Shown in pieces: positions 54,048 to 59,310 of a stretch of 64,000 nt of DNA. Source of the stretch: Pelomyxa schiedti (taxonomy: Eukaryota; Protista; Evosea). The stretch's first letter is position 1. Every line of letters begins with the position of its first letter. The notes beneath the pieces are model-generated. The model saw only the letters and a list, made by a program, of their open reading frames with translations, was not told the DNA's origin and ran no database searches. The stretch lies in contig JAHLWZ010000693.1 of assembly GCA_020536535.1 (NCBI GenBank), forward strand, positions 72,981 through 136,980. Direction: 5' to 3'. Both the position numbers and the translations under genes were made by a program.

Positions 54048-56327
54048 TCATTCAGAGGAAGAAGAGGCAAAGGAAGGGAGGACAGAGCAAAGCCAGAGGT
54101 AAGTCTCCCATGTTGGGTCAACGCCATCCTGCTGGAAGTACTCCGCAACCATTTCTTTGGTGACACCCACCTGCCTCATTGTGTGCTCAATGTGAAGAGG
54201 TGTTACTGTTGCCAACGGCATGAAGTGCTGGCAGACAAGTTCGGGAGTCATTTCTGGGAATAGAGAGAGGAGCATCTTCCATGTGGAGACCTTTGTGGAA
54301 ATCCCAGAACCTGGGTCATATTTGGTGTCCCACATTGTGGCCACCTGTTGTGAGTAAGTAGTGAAGAAAGAACGAACCGATGTCCGCACCTCACTCAGAG
54401 TGATGTTGAATTTGTGGATTAACCACTCTGTACACTTCGTTTTGCTGCTGCAAATCAAGATGAATAACAGATGGTTTCCATTCATTCTGATCTGCTCCTC
54501 GGTCAAGTTGAATTCCTGTACAAGCCATTTCACAGCTTTCCCGGACTGTACGCAACAAATTATGCTTTCTGAAATATCACTTGCCACATCAGAGGCAGAG
54601 AAGTTCATCAATGACACCAGCTGTTTCACGTCAGAGAGGCCATAAAATCCAATGGCCCCCGACAGTGTAGCATGCAAGTTGTTAGTGGGCTTGATATTGA
54701 ATATATTGGAAAGGGCCAAGTAGAGGTTGAGGTTATCATGGCACCTTGCATCTTCTATCGCCTTGGGAAGTGACTGTTCAAAGAAGTTTTTCGGGTTTGC
54801 ATGTGAAACAAACCACTTCAGCCCTTCAATGCACTCTTGACCACTCCACTTTCCTTTGCAGAGGATGGATCCCAAAGTCTCAGCTGTACAGAGTGGAGTG
54901 GCGTTGACAGTTTCCATCACATGGAAAGTCTCTTCTAGCCAATCAGCGATTGAAGTGTTGCTACAGGCCAGAGCTTCAACAAGACACTCTACTTGGTGTT
55001 TTATGGAACAGTCCCTAATAGGAAGGGCCAGGAGAAATTTTGGAATTTTCACACTGTCATGCTTGTTTCCACAAGCTATTATGAAACTATTAACGGAAAT
55101 GGATCCTAGGGAAGAACCAAAGTGCTGGAGCAACCATTGAATTGGTTCGATTTCTGCACTCTGTCGGCAGATCAAGTCCAGAGTCTCTTTTGTTGGGTCA
55201 AGAGAGAAAGCCTCTAATAACCATTGATGGGCGTCTACGTTGTGGATATATCCAAATAAACCCTGAATAGTGCTTCGGAATTTAGTCACCGTTCTGTCCT
55301 TTATCCACTGTAAGCTTTCAGTGAGTTCACTTCCAGTTAGTTTTGTGCCATTTGCAAAGTTCACATTGTCAACAACAGATAAGGTTCCTGTGTGGTTAAA
55401 CCAGGAATGCCAGCACTTCACTACTTCCAGGTTCCCACTTTTGAGAGCCTGTTCGTCAAGAACCAGTCGCTCTCGGGGCTTGGTTGTAGTAAGCAGTTTT
55501 CTGCACGATTCCACCACATCGGTGTTGTCAGCCATCCACCTAATAATTTCAGGGTATCCCCTGCGCATTGCAGTACGAAAAGGCCTGATAAATTCCCAGG
55601 GCCGGTCCGCTCCTAGCAGTGAAGTCGCCCACCGGACACTGTCAACATTCCCGCCGCGGCATGCCTCATTCAGCAGCTTCCTTGTTTCAGGTAAGTAACC
55701 ACCGAATGGCCACCTGAGCAACCCTCCCATCTGTGGGCAATCCCCACTCCCCACCAATGCCTGTGCCATACCAATGTGTCCACCTTTGGTTATTTTTTTT
55801 TTTTGGTCAAAAGTATACAATGGAGGTTGTAAAATCCAATGGAATGTAGTTCAGAACCACCCCAACACACCCCGGCACAGTCCAGCCAGCACAGCCAGGC
55901 ACTCCTTCTCGTTGTTCCCCGCCCCAGCCCCAGCCCCAGCCCCCGCGCCTCCCACTCCCCCTCCCCCTCCCAGGGACCCCTCCCGGTGCCGCCTCAGCAT
56001 CCACTCCACGCACCTGCGGCTCCCAGCCTCCGCGGCGCACCCGAGCCAGTAGTAGCGCGAGGTGTAGAGCTTAAGGTACAGCTCCTCCTTCTCCCAGTAC
56101 ACCCGGCCGGAGCCGGTTACGGCGCGGCAGGCCAGCGCCAGCAGCGGGAACAGGGCCTCGGACAGCCCCAGGACCCACACGCCCGTGGGCCGGTCCAGGA
56201 CCCTCTGGAGCCTGCCCTCGTGGCTGTAGTGCACCTTGCCCCGGCCTGTCACGAACGGAACCACAACAAACTCCCACACAACGCGCGAGATGTGGACTAT
56301 GCGTTGTGCCTCCTGCCTGTTGTTCAT
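54048..56327 (-). CDS. Intron-poor ankyrin-like/helical repeat protein
   Basis: ORF 55851..56327 splices at GLCRG|GHIGMAQ into the 590-aa ORF; repeats ACRGGNVDSVRW, ALKSGNLEVVKCW, ALACSNTSIADWL. Confidence 0.65.
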
Positions 56328-56431
56328 TGAATGTCTGCGTCGAATCGGTTCCGTAGCGATCAGGGAGAATCCGGGCCAAGAACAGAAGCAGAAAATCAAG
56401 AAACAGGAGGGGAGCAGACGAGGCCGAGGCA

Positions 56432-59138
56432 ATGGGCGAGGTGCACTGCTTCCTGGTGTTCAGTCTGGACTACGAGTGGGAGGCGGAGCTCGAGGCGGAC
56501 GGGACGCGGCGGCGCGGCAACAAGGGGGAGCCGCGGCGGCACGCAGGGTTCGACCGCTGGCGCGGGTTGTCGGCCGCGTCGGGGGTGGCGTTCATCAAGG
56601 AGCACTGGCTGCACTCCTCGGTCACGGTGGCGGCGCCGGGGACCTCGCTGGCCGCCGCGGTGCGCGGTTATGGGCGCACTGGCAGGGTCCACGCCTTCGT
56701 GGTGTCCCATAAGTGGAGGGAGAGAGATTCGGTGCTTGCTCCTACAAAGTACGCAGCTAGTGTACCTGAAGCTGAGGCTGAACCCGCACCCGCACCCGAG
56801 CCTGAGCCTGGGTCTGGGTCTGAGCCTGAGGTTGATGCTGATGCTCAGGCTGAGAACATTCCAAATGAACCTGGGAATGCGAGCGCATCTAATACTACTT
56901 CCACGTCTGTTTCGGAGACACACCCATCGTGCGGCGCCGACGAGACACCCGCGGCTCGCAGCGAAATTGTGGGACCTGAGAGCGCTGCACCTGATGAGGT
57001 TCTGGGCCAGATCCCTACAGTTGCAAATGATGGAAAGAAGAAAAAGAGGAGGAGGCGCAACAAACATAAAAAAAAGGCCACTACACTCGATTACCAACAA
57101 AAGTGGGACCTGGAACACCAGTTTCCCCTGATTTTTCACTCTTGGGGTCCAGAATCTCCTCCGGTTCGACTTGGGTCTTTGGAGGAAATCGAGGAGTTAC
57201 TTGCTCAGAAAGAGAATGACATGTCCCTGTATGACTTGGTTATGCAAAGATGCCCACCTCCAGCAAAGAGGAAGCCCAAGACACATGAATGCGTAGTAAA
57301 ACCTTTAGTAAGCATTCTGACCAAACGGTTTATCGATGACTTAATTCGTGCGAATTAGGCACCACCGAAATGGGAGCACCTGGAAAATGGAAGCTGGCTC
57401 AAGTACGACCCAGTAACAGTAAATCTTCTAAATTCCGCTCTGGAGTTGGGAACACCTTCGGTAGCATTATCCCATGGGGAATTTGCAGACAAATGGGGTG
57501 GAATCAACATAAGTTTGTGCACAATGCAGCAGACCAGCCGGTCCGGCAGAGCTAGGCGTATCAGGTTTGATTTCTATTATATCGAATTTATAATGGCAAA
57601 TAGATATGTGGGAAGTGACACAAAAATCCGACCATATTTGCCACCCACACTGCCGAAATGCTTGTATGGAATGAAATCTACTGATAACCTGAATCCATTG
57701 AGGCAAGAGATATGCCAGAAGTTGCTGGTTCCTCTCCGCTATAAGTAAGCTCCCTGTCCAAATTCTTCATTTTAATTACATCCAGATGCCTTCTTCTCAA
57801 ATTACCAGACGACATTCTAATAACCATTTTTTGCTTCATGGTACCAGAAGCAAATTGTCACTGCCACCAGGGGAAGGTGCATCGCCCTCTTTGTTGGAGA
57901 GACTAAGAACGTTTTGAATTCAAGATATTGGCAGAGATGGCAGCATATATGTTCTGTAACCTAGAACTGGTGTGCACGAGATTTGGCAGGAAGCGCCCCG
58001 ATGGAGACAGCCTAGTTGATCGAGCAGCTATGCAAATATGCTTGAGCAAGTTTAATTTTGACTCACAAGAACTGTCATCCTCTTTTCTTTCCTGGAAAGA
58101 GGTACTTTTATGGCAAGATCAAGATGTTAGAGGTAAAACCCTGTACAACTCTTTTCTTTCTAATTTCTTTTTGAGATAAGCGAGGTGCTTTGAAAGAGGC
58201 ATTACATAAAATTGCCTTTGGGAGTGGACTAAGAAAAGGGTCATCTTACATAGAACCGATTTATGACGATGAAAGGGAACGTGCCAGGCAGGCAATTGTT
58301 GCTAAATTTGGGGAATTGGATACCAATATAGTTACTAGAGTAAGCTCTAGCCACTGTGAACCATTCAATAACTAAATAAATAAAAAAAAAACAGCTAAGG
58401 AGACCCCGGAACCCATGCTTTTTAGGGGACGGCACTGTGAAGATGGCACATGGAATCACCAAGTTTCTCACTCAACCCCAAAGCCTATTTTACTTGAACT
58501 AACCAATGGAAAAGGTTGGTATCTGACATTCGTCCTGGTGATGAGGTATGCACTGAATCAGGAACCAGGAAAATAAAGACAGTCATTCAAAGGCAAGTAA
58601 ATGAACACCGACCCATGGTTTTTATCAATTCGCTTGGTCTCACACCAGGACACCCCGTCCTGTATAATGGGAACTGGGCACACCCGTTTGAGATAGGCGA
58701 AGTTGTTTCTGTCTATGTTAGTACCTTATACAATTTTGAGCTAGAAGGCGGTTCGCAGGTAGTCAATACAAACAGCATATCTCAAACCAAAGCATAACAT
58801 AACAAAACAAAACAACATAGATTACGGACCACTCTGCCGTGATAAATGGCCTAGTTGTGTGTACTCTGGGAAAGGATTGTGGAGCAAGGATCAGGGAGGG
58901 CTGGCCCACAATGGATTCTGAGTATGCAACAAACAACTTGCCATCTGTTAACAACCCAACAGATACGGAACAGGATACTGGAGAGCCCAATCCAATGAGC
59001 ACTAAGCTAAGTTCTGTGGAAAGCACTGCACAAAAAAAACTTCGCGAAAGCCCAAACATTCAGCGAAACGAAAAAAATTCATGCCATCTCGAATCCCGCA
59101 AGAAAAATTTGTCTTGTGGCTGTTGCTCGACCAGTTAG
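56432..59138 (+). CDS. Multi-domain protein: unknown N-terminus, WWE domain, F-box-like segment, Hint (Hedgehog/intein, Vint-like) domain, Cys-rich tail
   Basis: WWE KWEHLENGSWLKYD..MQQ..SGRARRIR (57367-57562); LLKLPDDILITIFCF (about 57790); Hint CFLGDGTVKMAHG..IRPGDEV..LTPGHPV..LYNFEL..HSAVINGLVVCTLG (58416-58875); ends CGCCSTS*. Confidence 0.75.
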
Positions 59139-59310
59139 TTACTCTGGTGTTTGCACTTTCCAAGACCACGCAACAACACGGAACAACGGGACTCGATTGT
59201 GGGAGATTTCATGCGTGGTGCTTCGGGGGCTGAGGAGGGGGCCAAATATCGCACTCTGTCTCTAGTTGGCAGGCAAATGCTTTTGGCTTTTTTTTTTTTT
59301 TTTTTTGTAA

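What the first reader, a model, noticed from the sequence alone, without database searches (positions are those of the whole stretch)
56432..59138. WWE + F-box-like + Hint autoprocessing fusion
Splicing seven or more small exons yields a WWE domain (a family that often reads poly-ADP-ribose), an F-box-like LLKLPDDILITIFCF segment, a helical region, and a Hint domain. The Hint has the catalytic N-terminal Cys (P|CFLG, TGC 58416) and block B T-x-x-H (TPGH), but no terminal His-Asn (VINGLVVCTLG), as in Hedgehog/Vint-type Hints that cleave only N-terminally (established). The tail ends KKNLSCGCCSTS, a possible lipidation signal. Hypothesis (inference): a membrane-tethered precursor self-cleaves to release, or ligate, a PAR-sensing SCF adaptor. 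I do not recognise this architecture.
Basis: partly seen in the sequence, partly recalled or inferred. Interest (0 to 1): 0.75.

Follow-up and report, generated by a model that had tools for sequence, protein, structure and literature searches.

The report
WWE, F-box-like, self-cutting Vint protein

Summary
The gene is real. Ten exons at 56432-59005 (+), with GT-AG introns of 39-62 nt, translate exactly to the public protein KAH3759377.1 ('Hint-domain', Pelomyxa schiedti, 713 aa). Pfam finds a Vint-type Hint (84.7 bits) and a WWE domain (21.5-25.2 bits; cut-off 21.1). The predicted Hint fold best matches the Tetrahymena Vint crystal structure 8R2C. Cys570 and Thr628-x-x-His631 are invariant among 24 aligned relatives.

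The F-box is only moderately supported: 14-16 bits in Pfam, profile-profile P = 3e-5 against the Pfam-significant F-boxes of paralogs, and a Cys/His-rich insert inside the motif.

The spliced end, ...YGTGYWRAQSNEH, matches a motif shared by paralogs and orthologs, so the membrane-tether idea falls.

Single transcripts of Mastigella eilhardi encode the same WWE / F-box-like / Vint order (35% identity over about 480 residues). About 45 loci in this genome carry the same Hint subtype.

Best reading: an intracellular ADP-ribose-directed SCF-adaptor precursor that cuts itself at Pro569|Cys570. That chemistry is untested.

I found no paper describing the architecture. The scan has already reported this family, including WWE members, on other contigs of this genome.

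The parts
56432..57307 (+). Exon 1 (residues 1-292). Residues 1-225 are unconserved, G+C-rich and low-complexity, with a polybasic run KKKKRRRRNKHKKK at about residues 205-218. Residues 226-292 are a small conserved alpha/beta region ahead of the WWE domain.
   Evidence: AF2 pLDDT is below 50 for residues 1-233. The alignment to Mastigella P0150 starts at residue 226. No Pfam domain.
57359..57564 (+). Exon 2: WWE domain (residues about 297-361, bases 57371-57564).
   Evidence: Pfam PF02825: 25.2 bits on the exon and 21.5 bits on the protein. In the model of the ortholog the top 24 Foldseek hits are all WWE domains. A family profile hits the DTX1 WWE domain in PDB at E = 0.0044.
57604..57744 (+). 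Exon 3: conserved stretch after the WWE domain (RYVGSDTKIRPYLPPTLPKCLYG...), then an unstructured linker.
   Evidence: The motif R.VG...F.RP...P.C.YG is shared with Mastigella and with paralogs, which supports the 39-nt intron 57565-57603.
57786..57876 (+). Exon 4: first helix of the F-box-like motif (LLKLPDDILITIFCFM, 57790-57840), then a Cys/His-rich insert VPEANCHCHQGK (57841-57876).
   Evidence: F-box 16.4 bits and F-box-like 16.3 bits, E about 0.009, profile positions 1-25. The insert motif CxCxCH is conserved in P0150, P0008, P0122 and P0153.
57925..58132 (+). Exon 5: second half of the F-box-like motif (ILAEMAAYMFCNLELVCTRF, 57925-57984) and the start of the helical linker.
   Evidence: On the protein, F-box-like scores 14.0 bits, E = 0.043, residues 412-458. 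hhalign against the canonical F-boxes of paralogs: P = 3e-5, probability 73%. Helices 438-458 and 468-481 in the model.
58176..58339 (+). Exon 6: helical linker (residues about 508-562).
   Evidence: Conserved with Mastigella, P0008 and P0013.
58395..58462 (+). Exon 7: predicted cleavage site Pro569|Cys570 (TGC 58416-58418) and Hint block A (CFLGDGTVKM).
   Evidence: C570, F571 and G573 are invariant in 24 relatives. Cys occupies this position in 93 of 101 Vint hits.
58515..58758 (+). Exon 8: Hint core with block B (Thr628 at 58642-58644, His631 at 58651-58653).
   Evidence: Pfam Vint 57.5 bits on this exon alone. T628, H631, P632 and W639 are invariant. pLDDT above 90.
58821..58921 (+). Exon 9: C-terminal Hint strands and the subfamily signature DHSAVINGLVVCTLGKDCGARIREGWPTMDSE. 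There is no His-Asn.
   Evidence: The block is conserved at about 45 loci of the genome. H670 is invariant; N675 and T681-L682-G683 are nearly invariant.
58963..59005 (+). Exon 10: conserved end YGTGYWRAQSNEH and stop codon TAA (59003-59005).
   Evidence: The motif YG.G[YF]W is found in paralogs and orthologs.
58922..58962 (+). Last intron (41 nt, GT-AG).
   Evidence: The intron position is conserved: Mastigella isoforms P0150 and P0003 differ by 17 residues at exactly this point.

Best explanation
This is one spliced gene: KAH3759377.1 of Pelomyxa schiedti, 713 aa. It has no signal peptide and carries a polybasic, NLS-like run, so the protein is probably intracellular.

The working model has three inferred activities.
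1. The WWE domain recognises an ADP-ribose-type ligand: poly/iso-ADP-ribose, ADP-ribose or ATP, as the solved WWE domains of RNF146, HUWE1 and TRIP12 do.
2. The F-box-like motif docks the protein onto Skp1/cullin. The protein would then act as an SCF-type counterpart of the PAR-dependent ligase RNF146.
3. The C-terminal Vint-type Hint domain performs an N-to-S acyl shift at Pro569|Cys570. The resulting thioester is resolved by a nucleophile. This irreversibly separates the 569-residue reader/adaptor from the 144-residue Vint domain, either as a maturation step or as a ligand-regulated switch.

Shown here: the gene model, the domain identities, the Hint fold, the intact catalytic motifs, and conservation of the architecture. 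Inferred: ligand binding, Skp1 binding, cleavage, and what cleavage is for.
For: Gene model:
- The ten window exons translate exactly to P0001.
- P0001 is KAH3759377.1, on a contig of 136980 nt, which is the length of C693.

One transcript:
- Mastigella eilhardi Trinity ORFs P0003 and P0150 carry WWE (29.4 bits), F-box-like (17.8 bits) and Vint (67.5 bits). They align with P0001 at 35% identity over residues 226-707.
- P0013 comes from a third organism. It is a 491-aa ORF on a 1704-nt contig and shows the same domain order.
- A second genomic copy lies on C835.

Hint domain:
- Pfam Vint scores 84.7 bits.
- phmmer hits the PDB entry 8R2C at E = 7.8e-7.
- The AF2 model of the Hint has pLDDT above 90. 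Its best Foldseek match is 8R2C (rmsd 2.1 A), followed by BIL2, inteins and hedgehog 1AT0.
- C570, T628 and H631 are invariant.

WWE domain.

F-box:
- Partial Pfam matches.
- Subgroup member P0047 passes the Pfam cut-off, at 26.2 bits.
- hhalign against the Kelch-type F-boxes that pass Pfam gives P = 3e-5.
- The nearest named ESM Atlas clusters are all F-box proteins, which is a lead only.

Partners exist in the genome:
- At least 25 loci have a PARP catalytic domain match above the cut-off.
- At least 4 Skp1 loci.

A link between Vint and E3 ligases recurs: canonical Vint proteins often start with a U-box.
Against: - No biochemical evidence exists for cleavage by any F-box-Vint protein. I found no transcript of this particular gene in the collections.
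- The F-box stays below both Pfam cut-offs, at 14-16 bits. It carries a 12-17-residue insert. It was not recovered by Foldseek or by a PDB profile search. An iterative search from it did not reach the canonical F-boxes of the Kelch-type paralogs.
- The WWE domain is only just above its cut-off and has pLDDT 50-67 in the model of this protein. The aromatic residue ahead of the distal strand that contacts iso-ADP-ribose in RNF146 (recalled from memory, not tested here) seems to be Ile or Gly in this protein.
- The residue before the catalytic Cys is Pro. This slows some inteins (own knowledge), although Pro is the second commonest residue at this position among Vint hits, 16 of 101.
- The domain order is unusual for F-box proteins: the receptor domain lies N-terminal to the F-box.
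Confidence: 0.45

Rival explanations
1. The protein is a WWE-Vint precursor with no link to SCF. The 'F-box-like' stretch would be a family-specific helical module, perhaps zinc-binding through its CxCxCH insert, that does not bind Skp1. The Hint may still cleave.
For: The F-box scores are below the Pfam cut-offs. No F-box structure was recovered. jackhmmer started from this region stays inside the CxCxCH subgroup. Conserved Cys and His residues lie in and after the insert.
Against: hhalign aligns both halves of the motif with the F-boxes of Kelch-F-box-Vint paralogs that pass Pfam, at P = 3e-5. Subgroup member P0047 passes the F-box-like cut-off. The LP[DE][DE][IL]L..I[FL] helix is the hallmark F-box helix 1. 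The ESM Atlas neighbours are all F-box proteins.
Confidence: 0.25
2. The Vint domain no longer cleaves. It would serve as a folded binding or scaffolding domain placed where F-box proteins usually carry their substrate receptor.
For: Pro sits at position -1. No cleavage data exist for this subfamily. The Hint lies C-terminal to the F-box, the usual receptor position.
Against: Cys570, Thr628, His631 and His670 are invariant across 24 diverged relatives from at least three organisms. That pattern is expected for catalysis rather than for a scaffold. Cys occupies +1 in 93 of 101 Vint hits.
Confidence: 0.15
3. One reading: a precursor anchored to a membrane by lipidation of a C-terminal CGCCSTS tail cuts itself to release the adaptor.
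For: If the last intron is retained, the frame runs on to ...RKKNLSCGCCSTS, with a Cys four residues from the end. Retention of the same intron is seen in a Mastigella isoform.
Against: The public model splices this 41-nt GT-AG intron. The spliced end restores the motif YGTGYW that paralogs and orthologs conserve. None of the paralog tails read, and none of the relatives aligned, ends in a Cys-rich tail. The retained Mastigella intron is in frame and encodes no such tail.
Confidence: 0.03
4. An annotation artefact: two neighbouring genes, one WWE/F-box-like and one Hint, wrongly joined.
For: I found no direct transcript of this gene. The public model comes from Augustus, PASA and EVM.
Against: The same order occurs in single Trinity ORFs of Mastigella, in P0013, and at C835, C926 and C931. 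All nine introns are 39-62 nt, GT-AG and in consistent phase, and nothing separates the halves. The linker between the F-box-like motif and the Hint is itself conserved.
Confidence: 0.03

Closest known systems
VWA-Vint proteins (Burglin 2008, PMC2362128; Pfam PF14623; crystal structure 8R2C of the Tetrahymena Vint domain)
   Same: The same Hint subtype by Pfam score, sequence and fold. N-terminal Cys and T-x-x-H are present, with no His-Asn. Presumed to be processed inside the cell. A recurrent link to E3 ligase modules: a U-box in some VWA-Vint proteins.
   Different: No VWA or Vwaint domain. WWE, F-box-like motif and helical linker stand in their place. A separate branch of the Hint tree (SH-aLRT 93) with its own C-terminal signature, TLGKDCG...WP..D..YG.GYW, in place of TLGH.
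Kelch / Ras-Rho GTPase / WD40 / ankyrin F-box-Vint paralogs of P. schiedti and Pelomyxa sp. JSP (for example KAH3762413.1, KAH3762813.1)
   Same: The same Hint clade and C-terminal signature, and the same order: receptor domain, F-box, linker, Vint.
   Different: The receptor here is a WWE domain. The F-box carries a CxCxCH insert and is much more divergent than the Kelch-type F-boxes, which pass Pfam.
RNF146/Iduna (RING-WWE E3 ligase directed by poly-ADP-ribose; PDB 3V3L, 4QPL)
   Same: A WWE domain joined to a module of the ubiquitin-ligase machinery. RNF146 WWE structures are among the top structural matches of the ortholog's WWE domain.
   Different: The ligase link would be an F-box (an SCF adaptor), not a RING. 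There is an added self-processing domain. Ligand specificity is unknown.
Hedgehog/Hog proteins
   Same: The Hint fold, and the logic of cleaving only at the N-terminal side through a Cys thioester (1AT0, 6TYY).
   Different: Pfam Hint module PF01079 scores only 16.6 bits against a cut-off of 29.7. No signal peptide, no sterol-recognition region of hedgehog length, and not secreted.
BIL2 domain of the Tetrahymena BUBL1 locus (PDB 6TMM, 6Y75; PMC8616854)
   Same: The second-best structural match. A Hint-type domain working within the ubiquitin system. It is a precedent for a Hint thioester being resolved by a lysine without ATP.
   Different: BIL2 has a C-terminal Asn and splices between ubiquitin-like domains. 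This protein has no C-terminal Asn, no downstream partner sequence (C-extein) and no ubiquitin-like domain.

Membership tests
Vint-type Hint domain (PF14623) | Profile score above Pfam's cut-off | tested here: met
   84.7 bits against a cut-off of 27, residues 569-686; 57.5 bits on exon 8 alone.
Vint-type Hint domain (PF14623) | Hint fold closest to a solved Vint domain | tested here: met
   AF2 pLDDT above 90. Foldseek rank 1 is 8R2C: E = 1.5e-8, rmsd 2.1 A, 26% identity.
Vint-type Hint domain (PF14623) | Block A nucleophile (Cys) and block B T-x-x-H | tested here: met
   C570, T628 and H631 are invariant in 24 relatives.
VWA-Vint proteins in the sense of Burglin 2008 | VWA and Vwaint domains upstream of the Vint domain | tested here: not met
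   P0001 gives no VWA or Vwaint hit at E up to 1. Canonical relatives do have them.
Vint-type Hint domain (PF14623) | Autoproteolysis at the X|Cys bond | not testable with these tools
   Needs expression with a C570A control.
WWE domain (PF02825) | Profile score above Pfam's cut-off | tested here: met
   25.2 bits on the exon and 21.5 bits on the protein, against a cut-off of 21.1, so the margin is narrow. The ortholog P0003 scores 29.4 bits.
WWE domain (PF02825) | WWE fold (half-barrel of strands with one helix) | tested here: met
   Tested on the Mastigella ortholog model (pLDDT 70-83): the top 24 Foldseek hits are all WWE domains, with target-normalised TM-score (TMt) about 0.8 for the best. 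The model of this protein shows the same order of strands and helix but at pLDDT 50-67.
WWE domain (PF02825) | Binding of iso-ADP-ribose, ADP-ribose or ATP | not testable with these tools
   Ligand-contact residues were not aligned rigorously. phmmer of the exon against PDB gave only chance hits.
F-box (PF00646 / PF12937) | Profile score above Pfam's cut-off | tested here: not met
   14.0 bits (E = 0.043) on the protein. 16.3-16.4 bits on the first half alone, against cut-offs of 24.3 and 20.5.
F-box (PF00646 / PF12937) | Homology to bona fide F-boxes by profile comparison | tested here: inconclusive
   hhalign against the Pfam-significant F-boxes of paralogs: P = 3e-5, probability 73%, with a 17-residue gap. 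jackhmmer links the region to P0047, whose F-box-like score (26.2 bits) passes the cut-off. jackhmmer does not reach the Kelch-type F-boxes.
F-box (PF00646 / PF12937) | Three-helix F-box fold and Skp1 binding | tested here: inconclusive
   Helices are predicted at 416-426 and 438-458 but with pLDDT 50-69. No F-box protein appears among the Foldseek or PDB-profile hits. Skp1 binding cannot be tested here.
Intein / BIL (protein splicing) | C-terminal Asn (His-Asn) followed by a downstream nucleophile | tested here: not met
   The last strand reads VINGLVVCTLGK, and the protein ends 30 residues later.
Hedgehog/Hog | Pfam Hint module PF01079 above cut-off, a secreted N-terminus, and a sterol-recognition region | tested here: not met
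   PF01079 scores 16.6 bits against 29.7. No signal-peptide-like N-terminus on inspection of the sequence. The tail after the Hint core is only 30 residues.
   The tail lies beyond a spliced 41-nt intron. It is absent from the paralog tails read and from the relatives aligned.

The most novel reading that the evidence does not exclude
The Vint thioester is not simply hydrolysed. One possibility: ligand binding gates cleavage, so that ADP-ribose or PAR binding by the WWE domain, or docking on Skp1, triggers it. The other: the thioester transfers the whole reader/adaptor fragment onto a nucleophile of a bound target. That would be an ATP-independent, single-turnover covalent tagging step, like the one shown for the BIL2/BUBL system of Tetrahymena, but here aimed by receptor domains (WWE, Kelch, GTPase, WD40, ankyrin) and coupled to SCF.
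Probability: 0.1. Interest if true: 0.9.

Novelty: new variant of a known kind. Interest (0 to 1): 0.6.

Why it matters
Vint domains were defined in 2008 and a crystal structure now exists, but their cellular role is unknown. In this family the Vint domain sits behind recognisable modules of the ubiquitin system. Here those modules are an ADP-ribose-reader-type WWE domain and an F-box-like motif. The family has about 45 loci in this genome, and relatives occur in at least two further organisms.

This gives concrete experiments with predictable read-outs: Cys570-dependent cleavage, the nature of any adduct on Pro569, Skp1 binding, and ADP-ribose binding. If the model holds, it would be an SCF-type equivalent of PAR-dependent ubiquitination (the RNF146 logic) with an irreversible self-processing step. 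It would also tie together the U-box-Vint and F-box-Vint associations as one theme: Hint chemistry recruited by E3 ligases.

Tried and rejected
- Lipid-anchor tail: rejected. It is intron read-through.
- Two-gene artefact: rejected, on the Mastigella single ORFs and the paralog architectures.
- Protein search of this genome with the WWE exon found no paralog. The Pfam WWE profile did find one next to a Hint on C835.
- Word-based search of 5.8 billion proteins with residues 226-568 returned only the protein itself. It missed even the 35%-identical Mastigella ortholog, so it says nothing about absence elsewhere.
- The look-up of encoding contigs has no record of P0001.
- phmmer of the WWE exon against PDB gave only chance hits to ALG-2.
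- Foldseek on both models and a PDB profile search did not recover any F-box protein.
- jackhmmer from the F-box-like region did not reach the Kelch-type F-boxes, nor the reverse.
- I suspected that Pro at position -1 marks an inactive member. This was weakened: Pro is the second commonest residue there among Vint hits.
- P0013 is not a P. schiedti transcript, so it gives no expression evidence for this genome.
- I did not find the paper behind PDB entry 8R2C in the held library.
Full report
**What is there**

The window is G000:C693:72981-136980, from a 52.4-Mb eukaryotic assembly. Three-frame reading of 56300-59300 shows a + strand gene split by very short GT-AG introns.

- Pfam finds a WWE domain in the exon 57359-57742 (PF02825, 25.2 bits; cut-off 21.1).
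- Pfam finds a Vint-type Hint in the exon 58516-58758 (PF14623, 57.5 bits; cut-off 27).

I handed no self-joined model to any search or folding tool. An exhaustive HMMER search with the Hint exon alone returned a public 713-aa protein, P0001, as its best hit. P0001 is KAH3759377.1, 'Hint-domain [Pelomyxa schiedti]', on a contig of 136980 nt, which is the length of C693.

All full-length analyses used that public record. The only joining I did was an equality check inside a script. It shows that ten window exons translate exactly to P0001:
- 56432-57307
- 57359-57564
- 57604-57744
- 57786-57876
- 57925-58132
- 58176-58339
- 58395-58462
- 58515-58758
- 58821-58921
- 58963-59005

All nine introns are GT-AG and 39-62 nt long. 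The genome paper reports 7.43 introns per gene and gene models built by Augustus, PASA and EVM with transcriptome data (PMC8887013).

**Check of the observation**

- The WWE domain.
- The LLKLPDDILITIFCFM segment.
- The helical stretch.
- The Cys codon at 58416.
- TPGH at 58642-58653.
- The lack of a terminal His-Asn.

The tail is not as described. A 41-nt intron (58922-58962) is spliced out, and the protein ends ...GWPTMDSEYGTGYWRAQSNEH at TAA 59003-59005.

The spliced end restores the motif YG[TRAS]G[YF]W. Paralogs carry it at the same place, and so do the Mastigella and Pelomyxa sp. JSP relatives. None of the paralog tails read, and none of the relatives aligned, has a Cys-rich end.

Two Mastigella isoforms differ by 17 residues at exactly this point. 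The intron position is therefore old, and retention does occur, but in Mastigella the retained intron is in frame and encodes no lipidation motif.

**The three domains**

*Hint.* On P0001 the Vint profile scores 84.7 bits over residues 569-686. phmmer finds the PDB chain 8R2C at E = 7.8e-7. The AlphaFold2 model, built on a 24-sequence alignment, has pLDDT above 90 across the Hint domain. Its best Foldseek match is 8R2C, the crystal structure of the Tetrahymena Vint domain (rmsd 2.1 A, 26% identity). BIL2 of the BUBL1 locus, many inteins and hedgehog 1AT0 follow.

In 24 relatives these residues are invariant: C570, F571, G573, G593, D594, T628, H631, P632, W639, L661 and H670. The protein ends 30 residues after the last Hint strand, so only cleavage at the N-terminal side is conceivable.

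*WWE.* The score is just above the cut-off, and the model of this protein is of low confidence in this region. For the Mastigella ortholog the WWE region reaches pLDDT 70-83. Its first 24 Foldseek hits are all WWE domains: TRIP12, HUWE1, RNF146, PARP11, PARP14, DTX1, Deltex and ZAP, with target-normalised TM-score (TMt) about 0.8 for the best. A family profile also hits the DTX1 WWE domain in PDB at E = 0.0044.

*F-box.* This is the weakest part. These results are in favour:
- The first helix alone gives 16.3-16.4 bits (E about 0.009).
- On the protein, the F-box-like profile gives 14.0 bits (E = 0.043).
- The motif is interrupted by a Cys/His-rich insert (VPEANCHCHQGK; consensus CxCxCH). Mastigella, Pelomyxa sp. 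JSP and several P. schiedti paralogs share it.
- An iterative local search links this region to P0047, whose F-box-like score (26.2 bits) passes the cut-off.
- hhalign aligns both halves with the Pfam-significant F-boxes of the Kelch-F-box-Vint paralogs, at P = 3e-5 and probability 73%.
- The nearest named ESM Atlas clusters for residues 400-568 are all F-box families. Their scores are 0.77-0.81, so this is a lead only.

These results are against:
- No F-box structure was recovered by Foldseek or by a PDB profile.
- jackhmmer does not bridge the two F-box subtypes.

I therefore call it F-box-like and rate Skp1 binding at about even odds.

**One gene or two?**

I found no transcript of this very gene. 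The architecture, however, is carried by single Trinity ORFs of Mastigella eilhardi (EukProt EP01105; P0003 and P0150). These align with P0001 at 35% identity over residues 226-707. The alignment runs through the region ahead of the WWE domain, the WWE domain, the F-box-like motif with its insert, the linker, the Hint and the end motif.

P0013 is a 491-aa ORF on a 1704-nt contig, from an organism that is not P. schiedti. It has the same domain order. A second genomic copy lies on C835. A mis-join of two genes is very unlikely.

**The family**

This genome has at least 47 Vint matches. About eight are canonical VWA-Vint genes. About 45 loci share the C-terminal signature of this gene, DHS.I.NGL.V.TLGKDCG...[WF]P..D..YG.G[YF]W.

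Pfam-significant F-box-like hits lie 0.4-1 kb upstream of the Vint hits, on the same strand, at C141, C386, C1061, C529, C387, C530, C1014, C690 and C721.

The N-terminal modules vary among annotated members and paralogs:
- Ras plus Kelch.
- Kelch alone.
- WD40 (Pelomyxa sp. JSP).
- Ankyrin (C926, C931).
- WWE.

Outside this group, the Hint-exon hits that I checked for domains are mostly (U-box)-VWA-Vwaint-Vint proteins; other contexts, such as P0064 with a Fic domain, also occur. On a quick tree of the Hint region, 22 of the 24 signature-bearing rows fall in one group of 23 (SH-aLRT 93), apart from the VWA-Vint rows.

**How it most likely works**

Shown here:
- The gene is intact.
- The Hint is of Vint type with its nucleophile and T-x-x-H in place.
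- The WWE fold is present.
- The genome encodes many PARP catalytic domains and Skp1.

From established knowledge:
- WWE domains of E3 ligases bind iso-ADP-ribose, ADP-ribose or ATP (titles of 3V3L, 6PFL and 9BKR).
- Hint domains form a thioester at the X|Cys bond.
- Burglin proposed that Vint proteins are processed inside the cell (PMC2362128).

Inferred: the protein is an ADP-ribose-directed SCF-adaptor precursor. Its Vint domain cuts the Pro569|Cys570 bond, releasing the 569-residue reader/adaptor. Cleavage may be a maturation step or a regulated switch.

Vint domains pair with a U-box in canonical proteins and with an F-box here. This suggests a general functional tie between this Hint type and E3 ligases.

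BIL2 of Tetrahymena is the second-best structural match. It conjugates a ubiquitin-like domain to lysines without ATP (PMC8616854). Transfer of the thioester to a target is therefore a live but minor alternative.

From memory only: a 2024 paper on the 8R2C structure suggested ligand-regulated cleavage by Vint. It is not in the held library, and I could not check it.

**Novelty**

I found no paper that combines F-box and Vint/Hint in this sense, and the genome paper does not mention the family. The public record is named only 'Hint-domain'.

The scan itself has already reported the F-box-Vint family on other contigs of this genome, including WWE members (s1-386749, s1-383125, s1-386773).

This report adds:
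- The corrected C-terminus.
- The exact ten-exon model.
- The CxCxCH insert that marks the WWE subgroup.
- The Mastigella ortholog aligned over the full length.
- Fold-level confirmation of the WWE and Vint domains.

Noticed in passing
window 57841-57876 (residues 427-438): A Cys/His-rich insert (consensus CxCxCH) sits between helix 1 and helix 2 of the F-box-like motif. Further conserved Cys residues follow in LCxLELVC. The insert is shared by Mastigella P0150, Pelomyxa sp. JSP P0122 and P. schiedti P0008 and P0153. It may be a small metal site; it remains unexplained.
   Followed up: partly
window 58922-59138: If the 41-nt last intron is retained, the frame shifts into a 72-residue tail that ends RKKNLSCGCCSTS, with Cys at position -4 (CaaX-like). 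I found no conservation of this tail. Whether such an isoform exists is unknown.
   Followed up: partly
window 56432-57106 (residues 1-225): The N-terminal 225 residues are G+C-rich at the start, low in complexity (EAEAEPAPAPEPEPGSGSEPE) and contain KKKKRRRRNKHKKK. They are predicted to be disordered and do not align with the Mastigella ortholog. There is no other Met upstream of the conserved part.
   Followed up: partly
window 54048-56327, minus strand: A divergently oriented neighbour gene has a long open frame with weak ankyrin-repeat matches (Ank_2, 24.5 bits, below the cut-off). Its ATG lies only about 100 bp from the ATG of the WWE-Vint gene, so the two probably share a promoter region.
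   Followed up: partly
L054 (G000:C693:40000-48000), match at C693:43518-44304, minus strand: Another member of the same Hint subfamily lies on the same contig, about 29 kb before the window starts. It is P0012 = KAH3759343.1.
   Followed up: no
L017 / L052 (G000:C835:about 69700-71200, minus strand): A second genomic WWE / F-box-like / Vint gene: RCLLLMMPNDVLVNILTSLL, SCFTGDGDVLM, TPGH, and the end ...WGRGYW. Its WWE exon is too diverged to be found by a protein search with this gene's WWE exon.
   Followed up: partly
P0064 (984 aa): In this protein the Vint domain (622-763) is followed by a Fic/DOC domain (817-893). This is a different and unusual context, with a domain downstream of the Hint. 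Its source was not looked up.
   Followed up: no
P0150 versus P0003 (Mastigella eilhardi isoforms): The isoforms differ by a 17-residue in-frame insert exactly where P. schiedti has its last intron. The intron position is therefore conserved between genera, and retention is seen in transcripts.
   Followed up: partly
G000 genome-wide: The genome is rich in ADP-ribosylation parts: 44 six-frame PARP catalytic matches and 22 WWE matches. These include giant open frames with tandem WWE domains next to a PARP domain (C277).
   Followed up: no
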